A stretch of 63,785 nucleotides of DNA, counting the filler, from Octopus bimaculoides (Eukaryota), in assembly GCF_001194135.2 (NCBI RefSeq). It is 6 parts of 6 records of this genome, joined end to end, with 100 filler letters (N's around TTAATTAATTAA, not from the genome) between each part and the next. Parts side by side here need not be neighbours in the genome. Positions count along the whole stretch, not along the records: positions 54,571 to 61,464 come from NC_068988.1; 5 more parts are not named here. One strand, 5' to 3'. Shown here piece after piece: positions 54,471 to 61,464 of this stretch. The notes under the pieces were generated by a model that saw only the letters and a list, made by a program, of their open reading frames with translations, did not search any database and was not told where the DNA came from. The position numbers were made by a program, and so were the translations under genes. The first letter of the stretch is position 1. Each line of letters starts with the position of its first letter.

Positions 54471-54849
54471 NNNNNNNNNNNNNNNNNNNNNNNNNNNNNN
54501 NNNNNNNNNNNNNNTTAATTAATTAANNNNNNNNNNNNNNNNNNNNNNNNNNNNNNNNNNNNNNNNNNNNTTGTCAGACTGCTAAATAATAGGAACATAA
54601 CCACACCAACACCAGTTGTCAACTGATGGTGGAGGACAAACACAGACACACAAACACACATGTATATATACATATACATATATACGACGGGCTTCTTTCA
54701 GTTTCCGTCTACCAAATCCACTTACAAGGCTTTGGGCGGCCCGAGGCTATAGTAGAAGACACTTGCCCAAGGTGTCACGCAGTGGGACTGAACCCGGAAC
54801 CATGTGGTTGGTAAGCAAGCTACTTACCACACAGCCACTCCTGCTGATT

Positions 54850-55055
54850 TCAAATTTTGGCACAGGGCCAGCGATTTTGGGGGAGGGGCTAAGTTAATTA
54901 CATCGACCCCCCCCCCGTGCTCATATCTGGTACTTATTTTATCAACCCTAAAAGGATGAAAACAAAGTTGTCCTCGGTGGAATTTGAACTCAGAACGTAA
55001 AGACAGACAAAATACTGCTGAGCATTTTGCCTAACAATTCAGGGCAGCTCGCTGA
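54850..55055 (-). mobile_element. SINE family B
   Basis: Reverse complement of the family B consensus. Confidence 0.75.
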
Positions 55056-55127
55056 CTTTATTCAGAAAATAGCCATCAGCAAAAACAAAATCAGATCTTA
55101 ATCCAATAGTATTTCTATTTATTTCAG

Positions 55128-55209
55128 TGTTGTAGAATACGCAAGTCATTTACATGAACATTTCTTGAATCCTGTTCAAGTAAAGAATGGTTACTACCAA
55201 GTTCCATTA
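55128..55209 (+). CDS. ENOSF1: ENOSF1 (L-fuconate dehydratase, rTS) penultimate exon
   Basis: TTTATTTCAG|T GTT GTA...CCA TTA|GTAAGT. 82 nt encoding VVEYASHLHEHFLNPVQVKNGYYQVPL, matching human VCEYVDHLHEHFKYPV...YMPPK as recalled. Confidence 0.93.
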
Positions 55210-55810
55210 GTAAGTTCGAAGAATTTGCTTTCATATGTCATACACACACATTCATATATAAAGTACAACAGACTATCTCCTCTCCCCTACCTGCCCTCCA
55301 ACTCATGTATTCTTGATTGACATTTAACCTTACCCAGTTTTTTTTACAGTTGTCACCTACTCTTCCCTCTTCCCAACTGCCCCTACTTATCATCCTTTGA
55401 CACATATCATTCTTTATCATCCCTTGACACCTAATATTCCCCTTCTCCCCTATTTGTTATCTCTAACCATCTCTTATTCTCCCAAGCACTCTTGTAACTT
55501 CAACCCACTCACACTTCCTGTTCTCCCGTCTGCTGTTACTTCAAATCATCTCATATCTTGAGCATTCACTCTGATTCCCTATCATCACAGTTTTTTATCT
55601 CTTTCCAGTTCCACCCAAGCCACTTTCACCCTCTCATCTATAATATGAGTAGCTGTGTAGTTACTCTGCAGCAAGAAACCTATTCTATTCTAGCCCCGTC
55701 TTTCACAGTTTAATCCTTTTGCCCCGTAGCATAAATCCACCTCTCTCTTTATTGCAGCCCACTCAGTCAAAGAGGATCTTCGTTTTGTAGGCTGTATGAT
55801 GACCCCACAA

Positions 55811-56185
55811 GTGGAGGCGCAATGACCCAGTGGTTAGGGCAGCGGACTCGCGGCTTCGATTCCCAGACCGGGCGTTGTGAGTGTTTATTGAGCGAAAACA
55901 CCTAAAGCTCCACTACGCTCTGGCAGGGAATGGTGGCAAACCCTGCTGTACTCTTTCACCACAACTTTCTCTCACTCTTACTTCCTGTTTCTGTTGTGCC
56001 TGTAATTCAAAGGGCCAGCCTTGTCACACTGTGTCACGCTGAATATCCCCGAGAACTACGTTAAGAGTACACGTGTCTGTGGAGTGCTCAGCCACTTGCA
56101 CGTTAATTTCACGAGCAGGCTGTTCCGTTGATCGGATCAACTGGAACCCTCGACATCGTAAGCGACGGAGTGCCAACAACAACGG
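55811..56185 (+). mobile_element. SINE family A in the last ENOSF1 intron
   Basis: Family A with (CAA)n tail. 14-bp TSD TGACCCCACAAGTG at 55800-55813 and 56186-56199. It interrupts an older repeat that continues to about 56400. Confidence 0.93.
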
Positions 56186-56998
56186 TGACCCCACAAGTGC
56201 TGGTGCCACAAAGAAAAAAAAAACAAGAGCAACCAGTACATTCTGTAAAGTGTTTGGCATTAGAAAGGGCAGCCAAGTGCGGAAGTCATGCCAAAGTAGA
56301 CATTGGTACATGATGCACACCTTGGATCCATCGGATCTCGTGAAACCATCCAACCCATGCCAAAAGGGAACGTGGATGTTCAATGATGATAATCACCATT
56401 GTCATCATCATTACTCATTCCCATCATCATCATCATCATTATCATCATTACTACTATCATTGCCATCTTTTTATTAAATCTAATGTCCCCCTTACTCTAA
56501 TTGTGCTGTGTGGGGGACCCAATGTTTCCTCTGCATCTCATAAAAGGTAACTAAAAGAGGTTCCGGTAGGATTTGTACTCTGACCTCGTAAAACCCTCAC
56601 CAACAACGACTGCTTATACAGACCCATGGGTTGCAGGGTTGTCCACCAGGAATAGTAGGGGTGTCACCTACAAATAGTGGATGCAGTGACACACTGTTAC
56701 AGCACATGTTACTACTACTTCTTCCACTACTACTACTACTACTATAACATGCTAAACAATTCCACAATACTACCACTCTTCATCCATTTCTTCCTCATCT
56801 GGCCACTTTTATGGATTTTCCCTATTTCAAATTTCCTCCGGTTGTCCAGGAATTCACCCTCTGCACTTCCTTTCTCTGTCTCTCTACTTCATGTTCTTTG
56901 TAATTCCAATGCTAAAAAAAGGGAAACAAATTGATAAAAATCTCTTTCATATTCCAGCAATGTTTTTATCATTAAAAAAATGGTACTCCGCCAGTTAT

Positions 56999-57285
56999 AA
57001 TGTCAATGGTTACAATGTCAATGCCAACATTTACAATGCCAATGTCAATTGACGATGTCAATGTCAATTGACAATGCTGATACCAATACTAATGCCAACA
57101 ATCAATGTCAATGTTAACAGCTACAATGTCAACTGACGATGCCAGTATCAGTAGCAATGTCAGCATGTGCAGTGTCAATTGGCAATGTTAATGTCAATTG
57201 TTACAATGTCAATTGGCAATGTCAATGTCGTTGCCGATGTCAACAGTCACAGCCAATGTCAACAGTTACAATGTCAATGTTAACA
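56999..57285. repeat. Degenerate AATGTC-based minisatellite
   Basis: Repeated CAATGTCAAT variants. Confidence 0.8.
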
Positions 57286-57889
57286 GAACAGCCTCCTCGT
57301 AAAATTAATGGGCAAATACCCTTAACATAGTTCACAGAGAGATTCAGTGTGGCACAGAAGGTGATTTAAAGGCTGGCCCCCTTTAAATTACGGGTACAAC
57401 TCAGTTTTGCCAGCTGAGTGGACTGGAGCAACATGAAAAAAAATGTCTTGCTCAAGGATACATGCATTGCTGGGATCGAACTCATGACCTTACAATCACA
57501 AGCTAAATACCTTAACCATTAAGCCGCACACCATCTTTTATTATAACATGTTTGTAAACAAACTAATTATTATGATAATATATTTATAACTAAGGAGAAA
57601 AACAACTAGTTTTAAATCTCTGAGTAAGAAATATGTAGTAACAGCACTGTACAGTAAACTGTATTTGCCAACGCAAAGTGGAAGTCGTACTAGAAAGTGG
57701 ACAGCAGACTCCCTTGCTTACAGTATACGCACTCAGATCATGTGTTGGTAGTCAGCTGGAAAAGATGTTTTCCTGGGGCTAAAATGTAGCAATATCGTTC
57801 TACATTTACTTTGGCAAATAGGTTTTAATCTTCGTAACTAATTTTCTGAAATGGAAGATGTTTCATTATTGTTGTCTTATGACTTTCAG

Positions 57890-57997
57890 AAACCAGGATT
57901 CAGTTCTGAGATGAAGGAATCTTCCCTGAAAGAATTTGAGTACCCCAATGGAAGTGAATGGCAAAAGCTATTTGTGGATGGCCTCTTTACCCCATGA
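57890..57997 (+). CDS. ENOSF1: ENOSF1 terminal coding exon
   Basis: GACTTTCAG|AAA CCA...CCA TGA encodes KPGFSSEMKESSLKEFEYPNGSEWQKLFVDGLFTP*, matching human DPGYSTEMKEESVKKHQYPDGEVWKKLL. Phase 0 agrees with the previous exon. Confidence 0.93.
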   Translation, partial: KPGFSSEMKESSLKEFEYPNGSEWQKLFVDGLFTP

Positions 57998-58138
57998 AAG
58001 AATTCACTCGTTATTAATTAATAATTGGAAGAAAGAAATAACTAAATTGACTCTGGTTCATTTTTTTTATTGTTGTTTTAATTGTTTATCAATATTTTGA
58101 GAATGTTAATTATATATGATTCTGGAAGATAATTACCA

Positions 58139-58144
58139 AATAAA
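58139..58144 (+). promoter_or_regulatory. Candidate polyadenylation signal of ENOSF1
   Basis: First AATAAA after the stop codon, followed by T-rich sequence. Confidence 0.4.
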
Positions 58145-58287
58145 TGCCATAATGGCATCTTCTCAGATTTGCCAAAAACTGACCAATAATTCTAAGTTTC
58201 AATATCTTTAATTGACAATTTTTTTTCTGTTTCCTGTACCATATTAAATCTTATAATAATAATGATGATGATGCTGATGATGATGAT

Positions 58288-58451
58288 TTCAAATTTTTGC
58301 CACAAGGGCAGCTTGGGGAGAAGGGATTAATTCGATTACATTGACCCCAGTGCATGACTGGTACTTATTTTATCAACCCCGAAAGGATGAAAGGCGAATA
58401 ATAATAATAATAATAGTAATAATAATAATAGTAATAATAATAGTAGTAGTA

Positions 58452-58500
<49 letters not shown>

Positions 58501-58697
58501 TAGTTTCTACTATAGGCACAGGACCTGAAATTGGGGGAGGGAGATAGTAAACTACATAATCCCCAGTACTTGAATGGTACTTTTTTCGTCAACCCTGACA
58601 GGGTGAAAAGCAAAATCAACCTCATCGAAATTTGAACTCAGAATGTGAAGATGGATAAATGCTGCTAAGCATTTTTGCTCCACGTGCTTGCCACCTT
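58288..58697 (-). mobile_element. Two SINE family B copies separated by an (AAT/AGT)n tail
   Basis: Partial copy 58288-58397, about 100 bp of AAT repeat, then a second copy 58503-58697. Confidence 0.75.
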
Positions 58698-59493
58698 AAC
58701 AATTATAGAAATATTGACAAATAAAGATAAAGAAGTGAAAGAAAACCAGTGGGTGTGTTTATTATTGGCATGATGACCCTCCCAGTACAGAACAAAATAT
58801 AGAAATACAATTTTGATGAATGTTTTTACAGTTTTAATTTGTTTTAGCTTTGTTAATAAACAACATCCTTCTCTCTATTTCCCTCTCTCTCCCTTTTATC
58901 TTTCTCTTTACAAGCTAAGCACAGTCATGTTAAACTATGGTACATGTGAATACAGGTGATGACACTATAAAGAAAAACTAAAGAAGAGACATATATGTGT
59001 AAACATAGACTTCTCAACAGCAGTTACCTTACATTAAACATTATTATAAAGTAAATATACGGATATAGAGACATGGCAAGATAACAGGAAGACACATATA
59101 GCCATAGCTTCTGTTGTAAGTTGGTAAAACATGTTGAAAAACTAACAACTACACTAGAAACAATTCATCTTTTAACAAAGCCACTGGTGGTCACCTCCAA
59201 ATGGAAAAAATATCAATGGCCTTCAACTTCAATAATTAACCAATCACAGCTAAGATCTTACCACCTTTTTCTTTTTCTTTTTTTTTTGTTATTAAAACTG
59301 TAACACATGACAAAGGATGAAAATTAACCTTTGGGTTATAAATGATAATGATATCCAAGATAATTATTCTCGTTTGTTAAATAATCTTTATAAAAATAGA
59401 ACCACAATTTAGGTCAAACACCGAATATTAGAGAATAAATTTGACAAGAAAACCATTCGAGACATTGTTTCTCTTAGTTTATATGAATGCAAA

Positions 59494-59574
59494 ATGGAAG
59501 CAACAATCACTGGATATTCTTTACATGTTGTTAGATTCCTCACGTCTCTTGGAATGCATGGTTCTGATGCAATG
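59494..59574 (+). CDS. ENOSF1: Second ENOSF1-type first coding exon (tandem paralogue or relic)
   Basis: AAAATGG Kozak. MEATITGYSLHVVRFLTSLGMHGSDAM|GTAAGT aligns to human MVRGRISRLSVRDVRFPTSLGGHGADAM and ends at the same DAM| phase-0 junction. Confidence 0.85.
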
Positions 59575-59789
59575 GTAAGTATTTTATTTGGTATTCCACC
59601 ACAGAAATATTTCATAATCTTCAGTTAAAATGTTATTTTGATAGAAATATCTTTTTAAACTGTCTCCTTGATTTGAAATTCAATGTAAGCTTCTGTTGTT
59701 CTGGAATTCAACAAGGAATCACAGAAATAACCAATATTATTTCTATATCTAAAAAAAGAATTCTTGTGATCACAGAATGTTAAGGTTAA

Positions 59790-60297
59790 TGAAATGCTGG
59801 TCAGTTTTGCCCACTGTGCTAACGTCTCTGCCAGGTCACTACCTTTATAATAATAATTCTTTCTATTATAGGCACAAGGCCTGAAATTTTGGGGTGAGGG
59901 GCATAGTCGATAACATCAACCCCACAATTTCACTGGTACTTAATCTATTAACCCCGAAAGGATGAAAGGCAAAGTTGACCTTGCCAGAATTTGAACTCAG
60001 AACATAGCGATCGGCAAAATACCTTTCATCCAATGCGCTAACGATTCTGCCAGCTTGCCATCTTAATAATTATAATAATAATGATTTCAAATTTTGGCAC
60101 GAGGCCAGTAATTTTTAGGGGAGAGGCTAAGGCAATTACATCAACCCCAGTGCTTAACTGGTACTTGTTTTACCAATCCTGGAAGGATGAAAGGCAAAGT
60201 TGCCTTCAGCGGAATTTGAACTCAGAACGTAAAGGTGGATGAAACGTCTCTAAGCATCCTGCCCAGCATACCAACACTTCTGCTAACTTGCCATGTC

Positions 60298-60331
<34 letters not shown>
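59790..60331 (-). mobile_element. Chain of three SINE family B copies with (AAT)n tails
   Basis: Partial head 59790-59845, copies 59862-60060 and 60083-60295, each bounded by TAA repeats. Confidence 0.8.
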
Positions 60332-60332
<1 letters not shown>

Positions 60333-60902
60333 GATAGCACCGGGCTGAATAACAACATGGATGTGCTACACCGGGCTTCCTATACAAAAACAAATCTAAT
60401 CCAATAACATCGATGGAATTAGGCAAAAGAACCGGTGGAAGATTTGAAGGAAGCGGTCTTTTAACGAAGATAATTTTTTTTTAAATATTTTTATTCTTAA
60501 AAAATGAAATTTTACTGCCATACAAAGCACAGGTCCTCTTATGCACGATGTCTCAGTGAAACACGTGCTATCACACACGCAAAACCAACACCGGAAAGTT
60601 TACAAACTATATAAAAAAATGGAACAAAATAGTAAGTACATATATTGAATAATTACGCATACACTCGAACGTGTACACAATGATATATACATTTTGATAC
60701 CCATAGAACTTCACATGCATCTTAATGTTTACACAACTACGTGAAATTTACAGGACACACTCACACATACGAAAACACATATCACAAACGAAGTAAAACC
60801 AAAACTTTTTTTCTTCTTTATTTATTTTCATTTTGTGAACAAACACAGACAGTGAACCATTCATAAGTTTAAAACGCCACACACAAACAAAAAAAATACA
60901 CT

Positions 60903-61464
60903 ATGCCCGGAGATAAACCTATCAACAAAAAAAATACAGATGAATACCGATCTGCTAGCCTTAAAAAACTACGCTACGAGCAATGTTTACATGCTGAGAA
61001 CTCGTTGACGGTGTTGTCTCAAAAAACTGACCCTAAACAGACAAATCCGTCTCCTAATGTCAACGCCAAAGCTCGTCAAGCCTCAATGATAACAAAGCAG
61101 ATCACAAACCACATTGGTCGTCGACCGAATCACAAAGGGTCACTTACTCGATATAGATCTGCTAGCCCTAAGAAGCTACGTCACGAGAGCTCGGAGACGG
61201 TGTTGTCTCAAAAAATTTACCCTAAACAGCCAGATCCGTCCCCTAGCGTCAACGTCGAAGCTTGTTATGTCTCACTGTTAATAAAACAAAATACAAACCG
61301 GAATGGTCATCGACCGGGTTATAAAGGACCACTTACTCGGATAATGGACCAGATCCGAGACGAGAAATCTGCTACTGGTTCAAATCTTCCCGACACACAG
61401 GAACTGGAAGTACCCCACAACCGGAATATTCCAACAGATGGCCATCCATGCTCGTCATCAAATA
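60903..61464 (+). CDS. Uncharacterised open frame (about 187 codons, truncated by spacer) with an internal 63-69-aa tandem repeat
   Basis: ATG at 60903, no stop before the contig end. Two copies of YRSASxKKLRxE...TVLSQK..PKQ..PSP.VN...KG.LTR. Could be the start of a retroelement ORF. Confidence 0.45.

What the first reader, a model, noticed from the sequence alone, without database searches (positions are those of the whole stretch)
59413..59580. A second ENOSF1 first exon right behind the end of ENOSF1, with the conserved DVRFPTS motif altered
Seen: in one gap-free contig (54571-61464) the ENOSF1 stop (57997) is followed 1.5 kb later by an exon encoding an ENOSF1 N-terminus with a good Kozak context and a GTAAGT donor. 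Its motif reads VVRFLTS, and each change is a single base from the expected codon (GAT>GTT, CCC>CTC). The frame is also open 27 codons upstream to an acceptor at 59412 (VKHRILENKF...), with a second acceptor at 59477. Known: DVRFPTS is conserved from bacterial FucD to human ENOSF1, and this segment is the N-terminal extension that distinguishes human rTS-gamma from rTS-beta. Inference: a head-to-tail tandem duplication, with the second copy either decaying or diverging in substrate or function. Read-through transcripts joining copy 1 to copy 2 are possible.
Basis: partly seen in the sequence, partly recalled or inferred. Interest (0 to 1): 0.7.

Follow-up and report, generated by a model that had tools for sequence, protein, structure and literature searches.

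The report
Second ENOSF1 first exon after ENOSF1
Right behind the end of an octopus-type ENOSF1 (L-fuconate dehydratase) gene sits an intact first exon of another ENOSF1 copy in the same direction, most likely the start of an ordinary tandem gene duplicate, with two residues changed that are almost never changed in this family.

Summary
On the + strand the piece holds the last two coding exons of an ENOSF1 gene (55128-55209 and 57890-57997, stop at 57995-57997). An ATG-initiated 27-codon exon follows 1.5 kb later (59494-59574, MEATITGYSLHVVRFLTSLGMHGSDAM) and ends at a GTAAGT donor.

A 181-sequence family profile places this exon at the protein's N-terminus (12.1 bits; 0 of 300 shuffles reach it; p about 8e-5). 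Its length, junction and phase match exon 1 of fish and sawfly ENOSF1 exactly.

The motif VVRFLTS is really aberrant. Among 242 family N-termini, D is kept in 240 and P in 238. None has V or L, and none has both positions changed.

The best reading is exon 1 of a head-to-tail tandem ENOSF1 paralogue under relaxed or shifted constraint (confidence 0.6). No exon 2 lies in the 1.9 kb available downstream. No cephalopod or mollusc ENOSF1 could be retrieved, so I could not test whether copy 2 is complete, whether it is expressed, or whether the assembly is correct.

The read-through idea is weak. The in-frame acceptor (59412) is poor, and the good acceptor (59477) is out of frame with the upstream donor.

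This is an ordinary kind of event and of low interest.

The parts
55128..55209 (+). Penultimate coding exon of the upstream ENOSF1 gene (copy 1): (x)VVEYASHLHEHFLNPVQVKNGYYQVPL. Acceptor AG at 55126-55127, donor GTAAGT at 55210-55215.
   Evidence: 25.9-31.7 bits against the family profile. Pfam MR_MLE_C C-terminal match. Both boundaries match the fish gene's exon for residues 366-393.
57890..57997 (+). Last coding exon of copy 1, KPGFSSEMKESSLKEFEYPNGSEWQKLFVDGLFTP, with TGA stop at 57995-57997.
   Evidence: 26.4-28.7 bits. The junction is at the same place as in the fish last exon.
58139..58144 (+). AATAAA, the likely polyadenylation signal of copy 1, 142 nt after the stop codon.
   Evidence: Motif only, so this is inferred.
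59389..59396 (+). TATAAAAA, a candidate TATA box 105 nt upstream of the ATG. It would place a transcription start near 59420.
   Evidence: one of only two such octamers in the piece. The sequence is AT-rich, so this is a weak inference.
59413..59493 (+). In-frame open stretch upstream of the ATG (VKHRILENKFDKKTIRDIVSLSLYECK). Most likely 5' UTR or promoter-proximal sequence rather than coding.
   Evidence: chance P = 0.07-0.17, and no family similarity (the profile alignment starts at the Met region).
59494..59574 (+). ENOSF1 exon-1 homologue: 27 codons, MEATITGYSLHVVRFLTSLGMHGSDAM, with the motif VVRFLTS in place of D[VIL]RFPTS.
   Evidence: 12.1 bits, p about 8e-5. Same length, junction and phase as fish and sawfly exon 1.
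59575..59580 (+). GTAAGT splice donor, phase 0, directly after the Met codon of ...DAM.
   Evidence: There are four GTAAGT sites on the + strand of the piece, and two of them close ENOSF1 exons.
58102..58185 (-). Side observation: a minus-strand stretch (Y)WSVFGKSEKMPLWHLFGNYLPESYI that resembles family residues about 119-146 (WDLWAK..KPLWKLL.DM.PE). It lies inside the 3' UTR of copy 1.
   Evidence: 10.2-10.5 bits, 0 of 300 shuffles, Gumbel p about 3e-4. Its origin is unresolved.

Best explanation
The exon at 59494-59574 is the first coding exon of a second ENOSF1-like gene lying head-to-tail directly downstream of a first ENOSF1 gene. This is a tandem duplication of the L-fuconate dehydratase gene in an octopus-type genome. 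Copy 1 ends at the stop at 57997 and probably polyadenylates shortly after 58139. Copy 2 starts about 1.3 kb further on, probably from its own promoter just upstream of 59494, and its intron 1 is longer than the 1.9 kb that remain in the piece. Copy 2 keeps the start codon, the Kozak context, the splice donor, the exon length and the TSLG-HGSDAM part of the active-site lid. It has replaced two residues that are almost invariant in the family (D>V and P>L). It is therefore no longer under the usual constraint: either it is drifting towards a pseudogene, or it has shifted in function. Shown here: the homology, the orientation, the intact exon signals, the conserved junction, and the rarity of the two substitutions. 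Inferred: that a complete second gene follows, that it has its own promoter, and which of decay or divergence applies.
For: - The peptide's only PDB match is the exact N-terminus of human ENOSF1.
- The family profile places the exon at positions 2-28 with 12.1 bits; 0 of 300 shuffles reach that, p about 8e-5.
- Exon 1 in Oryzias javanicus is also 27 codons ending ...GSDAM|gtagga. In Athalia rosae it is 28 codons ending ...GAT GCT ATG|GTAGGA, and exon 2 starts HTDPNYS. Liang 2005 reports the same first junction in human and Anopheles.
- The upstream exons are unambiguous ENOSF1 C-terminal exons with fish-like boundaries.
- The exon is 14/23 identical to human and to fish (hand count on the sequences). 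That is no more diverged than copy 1's C-terminal exons are from fish (13/27 and 15/27, same kind of count).
- D is kept in 240 of 242 family N-termini and P in 238 of 242. None has V or L, and none has both changed.
- The exon lies in unique sequence between SINE copies, not inside a repeat.
Against: - Only one exon of the putative copy 2 is visible. No exon 2 (HTDPDYS) lies in 59575-61464.
- No cephalopod or mollusc ENOSF1, transcript or longer contig could be retrieved. Copy number, expression and assembly correctness are therefore untested.
- ENOSF1 is single-copy in the three other animal loci examined: amphioxus, sawfly and fish.
- The stretch between the two units contains SINE fragments and an (AAT)n tract (58290-58700), a typical place for a false join.
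Confidence: 0.6

Rival explanations
1. A lone duplicated fragment: only the 5' end (promoter region plus exon 1) of ENOSF1 was copied behind the gene, or the rest of a second copy has since been deleted. The exon would then be a non-functional relic that happens still to be intact.
For: - Two near-invariant residues are changed within 21 nt, as expected once constraint is lost.
- No further + strand ENOSF1 exon appears downstream.
- A second, degenerate ENOSF1-like fragment lies in inverted orientation at 58102-58185, which suggests the locus has a history of fragmentary rearrangement.
Against: - The start codon, Kozak context, reading frame and consensus GTAAGT donor are all intact.
- Apart from the two sites, the exon is as conserved against vertebrates as copy 1's exons are.
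- 1.9 kb is shorter than the one intron that can be measured here (2.7 kb, 55210-57889), so the absence of exon 2 says nothing.
Confidence: 0.22
2. An assembly artefact: there is one ENOSF1 gene, and the contig falsely joins its 3' flank to its 5' flank through shared SINE or microsatellite sequence. Alternatively two haplotypes or collapsed reads were mis-joined. The exon would then be the gene's real exon 1, and VVRFLTS the normal sequence of this lineage.
For: - SINE fragments and an (AAT)n run lie exactly between the two units at 58290-58700.
- The piece is short.
- ENOSF1 is single-copy in the three other animals examined.
Against: - A random false join through a SINE would link the gene's end to any of a huge number of SINE copies in the genome. 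Landing on the same gene's own start in the right orientation is very unlikely unless the copies really are adjacent (inference).
- About 800 bp of unique sequence separates the SINE from the exon.
Confidence: 0.13
3. Chance resemblance: an AT-rich open frame that merely looks like an ENOSF1 N-terminus.
For: The peptide alone is weak against PDB (E = 0.32), and the first 5-sequence profile gave only 7.1 bits, reached by 2 of 300 shuffles.
Against: - The larger profile gives 12.1 bits with 0 of 300 shuffles, p about 8e-5, counted over any position and any frame.
- The match also starts at an ATG, aligns to the profile's N-terminus, has the exact length of fish exon 1, ends at the conserved phase-0 junction on a GTAAGT, and sits next to an ENOSF1 gene on the same strand.
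Confidence: 0.01

Closest known systems
Exon 1 of animal ENOSF1 (human rTS-gamma N-terminal extension; fish and insect ENOSF1 exon 1)
   Same: It encodes the 27-28 residue N-terminal segment ...xVRFxTSLGxHGSDAM. It has the same exon length as the fish exon (27 codons), the same phase-0 junction after ...DAM, and it keeps the GSD of the lid.
   Different: It has V for the near-invariant D and L for the near-invariant P. It lies downstream of another ENOSF1 gene rather than at the head of a single-copy locus.
Xanthomonas campestris L-fuconate dehydratase FucD (PDB 1YEY, 2HXT, 2HXU, 2HNE) and human ENOSF1 (PDB 4A35)
   Same: Same family: the relatives used for the profile match these structures at E of 1e-163 to 1e-220. 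The octopus upstream exons match the family C-terminus.
   Different: Only 27 + 63 residues of octopus sequence are visible. The catalytic Lys/His and the Mg ligands lie outside the piece, so the activity of either copy cannot be judged.
Vertebrate YES1-ENOSF1-TYMS arrangement (ENOSF1 tail-to-tail with thymidylate synthase; the rTS antisense overlap)
   Same: The sequence of interest lies immediately 3' of the ENOSF1 stop codon. The fish locus shows TYMS on the opposite strand 280 bp after ENOSF1.
   Different: In the octopus piece the 3.5 kb after the stop codon show no TYMS-like sequence on either strand (tblastx). The neighbour is another ENOSF1 5' end on the same strand.
Ordinary head-to-tail tandem gene duplicates, including unprocessed pseudogenes
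   Same: Two homologous units in the same orientation, a short intergenic spacer, introns retained, and one copy carrying substitutions at conserved sites.
   Different: Only the boundary between the units is seen. The completeness of both copies is unknown.

Membership tests
ENOSF1 / L-fuconate dehydratase family (enolase superfamily, mandelate racemase subgroup) | N-terminal segment homologous to the family N-terminus | tested here: met
   Profile of 181 members: 12.1 bits at profile positions 2-28, 0 of 300 shuffles. The only PDB hit is human ENOSF1 residues 7-29.
ENOSF1 / L-fuconate dehydratase family (enolase superfamily, mandelate racemase subgroup) | Animal gene structure: exon 1 ends after ...DAM in phase 0 | tested here: met
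   The junction is identical in Athalia rosae and Oryzias javanicus. Amphioxus has no intron there, so the feature is common but not universal.
ENOSF1 / L-fuconate dehydratase family (enolase superfamily, mandelate racemase subgroup) | Near-invariant Asp and Pro of D[VILM]R[FW]PT[SA] | tested here: not met
   The exon reads VVRFLTS. In 242 family N-termini D is kept in 240 and P in 238, none has V or L, and none has both changed.
ENOSF1 / L-fuconate dehydratase family (enolase superfamily, mandelate racemase subgroup) | Lid residues G-S-D-A-M that follow the motif | tested here: met
   HGSDAM is present and matches animal sequences. That GSD contacts the substrate is recalled from database annotation and was not tested here.
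ENOSF1 / L-fuconate dehydratase family (enolase superfamily, mandelate racemase subgroup) | Catalytic Lys and His and the three Mg2+ ligands of the barrel domain | not testable with these tools
   These residues would lie in exons beyond the edge of the piece. No longer contig or transcript could be retrieved.
ENOSF1 / L-fuconate dehydratase family (enolase superfamily, mandelate racemase subgroup) | Exon 2 (HTDPDYS...) and later exons downstream on the same strand | tested here: inconclusive
   None in 59575-61464. Only 1.9 kb is available, while the one measurable intron here is 2.7 kb.
Head-to-tail tandem gene duplication | Two homologous units adjacent in the same orientation | tested here: met
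   The 3' exons of one unit (55128-57997) and the 5' exon of another (59494-59574) are both on the + strand.
Head-to-tail tandem gene duplication | Both units complete, and the join real in the genome | not testable with these tools
   This needs the full assembly or long reads. Nothing from this species or its relatives was found in any collection.
Unprocessed pseudogene | Disabling lesion (stop codon, frameshift, lost ATG or lost splice site) | tested here: not met
   The ATG, the frame and the GTAAGT donor are intact in the one visible exon.
Unprocessed pseudogene | Loss of constraint at family-invariant positions | tested here: met
   Two near-invariant residues are replaced. This is also compatible with functional divergence.

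The most novel reading that the evidence does not exclude
Copy 2 is a complete, expressed ENOSF1 paralogue of octopods. Two otherwise invariant residues at the base of the active-site lid (D>V, P>L) have been replaced under selection, giving an animal member of the L-fuconate dehydratase family with altered substrate preference or a non-catalytic role. A-to-I RNA editing cannot restore the canonical residues, because GTT and CTC contain no A at the relevant positions.
Probability: 0.2. Interest if true: 0.4.

Novelty: new member of a known kind. Interest (0 to 1): 0.2.

Why it matters
If a full second copy exists, it would be a lineage-specific tandem duplicate of the animal L-fuconate dehydratase gene, which was single-copy in the three other animal loci examined here. 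It would also be a natural variant at two positions that are otherwise almost never changed, which makes it a modest but usable probe of what the conserved DVRFPTS segment does. For genome annotation, the practical point is to avoid fusing the two units into one gene model, and to avoid dropping the short 81-nt first exon. It bears on no long-standing question.

Tried and rejected
- A homology search with the composite of the window's N- and C-terminal exon peptides found no protein sharing three 5-residue words. This animal's ENOSF1 is not in the 5.8-billion-protein collection.
- An exhaustive HMMER search returned family members, mostly anonymous fragments, with the best only 52-57% identical.
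- A search with the best full-length hit returned only arthropods, because the query turned out to be hymenopteran.
- A synthetic probe (the window's termini joined by invariant family motifs) ranked short vertebrate isoforms and bacteria first. No mollusc appeared.
- Exact look-ups of two window ORFs and two metagenome DNA scans found nothing, so the locus could not be extended.
- Literature: no paper links ENOSF1 and octopus. Wichelecki 2014 (PMC4010280) is not held, so the structural roles of the D and P could not be documented.
- No tRNA and no Rfam family in the piece. No Pfam domain in the ORF at 60903 onwards. No TYMS-like sequence.
- Rejected: that the 27 open codons upstream are coding (chance P = 0.07-0.17, no homology). 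Also rejected: an in-frame read-through via the good acceptor at 59477, which is out of frame.

Full report
**What is in the sequence**

The piece 54571-61464 is AT-rich animal DNA full of SINE copies and (AAT)n tracts.

On the + strand it holds two clear ENOSF1 coding exons:
- 55128-55209 encodes (x)VVEYASHLHEHFLNPVQVKNGYYQVPL, with donor GTAAGT at 55210.
- 57890-57997 encodes KPGFSSEMKESSLKEFEYPNGSEWQKLFVDGLFTP and the stop.
- An AATAAA lies at 58139.

These exons score 26-32 bits against family profiles. They match the end of Pfam MR_MLE_C.

An ATG in the context caaaATGG lies 1,497 nt after the stop. It opens 27 codons, MEATITGYSLHVVRFLTSLGMHGSDAM (59494-59574), which run straight into GTAAGT.

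**Is the exon more than chance?**

- The 27-aa peptide alone is weak: it has a single PDB hit at E = 0.32. That hit is residues 7-29 of human ENOSF1, the very N-terminus.
- A crude 5-sequence profile gave 7.1 bits, and 2 of 300 dinucleotide shuffles of the whole piece reached that.
- A profile of 181 full-length family members gave 12.1 bits, aligned to profile positions 2-28. None of 300 shuffles reached it, and a Gumbel fit gives p about 8e-5, counted over any frame and any part of the profile.
- Gene structure adds independent evidence. In the fish Oryzias javanicus, exon 1 is also exactly 27 codons (MSPKIVDVSVRDVRFPTSLEQHGSDAM) followed by gtagga.
- In the sawfly Athalia rosae, exon 1 is 28 codons ending GAT GCT ATG|GTAGGA, and exon 2 starts HTDPNYS.
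- Liang et al. 2005 report the same first junction in human and Anopheles, and show that this 27-residue extension is what separates rTS-gamma from rTS-beta.
- Amphioxus lacks this intron, so it is widespread but not universal.
- The boundaries of the two upstream octopus exons also coincide with those of the last two fish exons.

The exon is therefore a true ENOSF1 exon-1 homologue.

**The altered motif**

I collected 242 family N-termini: 17 cluster representatives, 116 arthropods, and 109 vertebrates, other animals and bacteria.
- The first motif position is D in 240. The exceptions are G and Y.
- The fifth position is P in 238. The exceptions are T once and Q twice (the two Q sequences have identical N-termini and are both from Seriola).
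- None has V or L at these positions, and none has both changed.

VVRFLTS is therefore really aberrant for the family.

The rest of the exon is well kept. It is 14/23 identical to human and to fish, by hand count on the sequences. For comparison, copy 1's two C-terminal exons are 13/27 and 15/27 identical to fish, by the same kind of count.

The remark that each change is one base from the canonical codon is true but uninformative. A-to-I editing, which is frequent in cephalopods (established knowledge), could not restore D or P from GTT or CTC.

I could not document the structural role of these two residues. The key paper is not held, and the papers I could read discuss only the catalytic and metal-binding residues.

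**Surroundings of the exon**

- The exon sits in about 1.1 kb of unique sequence between SINE copies at roughly 58500-58700 and 59845-60290.
- A TATAAAAA lies at 59389, 105 nt upstream of the ATG. It is one of two such octamers in the piece. This hints weakly at an own promoter with a start near 59420.
- The 27 open codons upstream are expected by chance (P = 0.07-0.17) and show no family similarity.
- The acceptor at 59412, the only one in frame with the phase-0 donor at 55209, has a poor pyrimidine tract: 0.40, against 0.70 at both real acceptors.
- The acceptor at 59477 is as good as the real ones. Joined to donor 55209, however, it reads TTA|TTT ATA TGA. An in-frame copy1-copy2 fusion is therefore unlikely. 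If 59477 is used at all, it more plausibly marks a 5'-UTR intron.
- No exon 2 (HTDPDYS) or any other + strand ENOSF1 exon occurs in 59575-61464. That is only 1.9 kb, and the one intron measurable here is 2.7 kb.

**Interpretation**

An ENOSF1 3' end followed on the same strand by an ENOSF1 5' exon is what the junction of a head-to-tail tandem duplicate looks like. I consider this the best explanation (0.6).

The intact start, frame and donor, together with two hits on near-invariant residues, mean the copy is under relaxed or shifted constraint. With 81 nt, I cannot distinguish early decay from functional divergence.

The rivals are:
- A lone duplicated 5' fragment (0.22).
- A false assembly join through the SINE/(AAT)n block at 58290-58700 (0.13). 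A random false join would very rarely link a gene's tail to its own head.
- Chance (0.01).

ENOSF1 was single-copy in the three other animal loci I could inspect. In the fish it lies tail-to-tail with TYMS. The octopus piece shows no TYMS-like sequence.

**What could not be done**

No cephalopod or mollusc ENOSF1, transcript or longer contig could be obtained from any collection. No paper connects ENOSF1 with octopus.

The following remain untested: copy number, completeness of copy 2, expression, assembly correctness, and whether VVRFLTS is shared by other octopods.

**Verdict**

The kind of event is ordinary: a tandem duplicate of a known enzyme gene, possibly a young pseudogene. Interest is 0.2.

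Noticed in passing
window 58102-58185, minus strand: Inside the 3' UTR of copy 1, overlapping its AATAAA, the minus strand reads (Y)WSVFGKSEKMPLWHLFGNYLPESYI. This resembles the internal ENOSF1 segment WDLWAK..KPLWKLL.DM.PE (family positions about 119-146). It scores 10.2-10.5 bits, 0 of 300 shuffles reach that, and the Gumbel p is about 3e-4. In the fish gene this segment is split over three exons, so it is not a simple exon relic unless octopus lacks those introns. It may be an old inverted fragment of the gene, or a rare chance match. The DNA also contains the palindrome ATGCCAT-A-ATGGCAT.
   Followed up: partly
window 60903-61464, + strand (runs off the piece): An open frame of at least 187 codons (MPGDKPINKK...) with no Pfam match. 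It contains an internal direct repeat of 155 nt at 189-nt (63-codon) spacing, 79% identical (60996-61150 and 61185-61339). It lies where intron 1 of the putative copy 2 would be, and may be part of a lineage-specific repeat or mobile element.
   Followed up: partly
window 54850-55040, 58290-58700, 59845-60290: At least five copies or fragments of one SINE-like element (...GGTACTTATTTTATCAACCC.GAAAGGATGAAAGGCAAAGT...GAATTTGAACTCAGAAC...). They are often paired 216-225 nt apart and separated by (AAT)n tracts. ARAGORN finds no tRNA gene and Rfam finds no family.
   Followed up: partly
window 57000-57280, + strand: A degenerate tandem array built on the unit CAATGTCAA(T/C)(T/A)G within the last intron of copy 1. 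Three 74-nt copies are 61-76% identical to the reference copy.
   Followed up: no
proteins P0002, P0023, P0097, P0100 and others: Several database 'proteins' of 75-125 aa join a FucD N-terminus (MKITS..DVRFPTS..DGSDAM) directly to a FucD C-terminus (..EYVDHLHEHF..), with the whole barrel domain missing. They come from anonymous public contigs. They may be internally deleted bacterial gene remnants or assembly artefacts.
   Followed up: no
proteins P0302 and P0313 (Seriola lalandi dorsalis): Two ENOSF1 entries from this fish read DVRFQTS, the only vertebrate departures from the conserved Pro in the sample.
   Followed up: no
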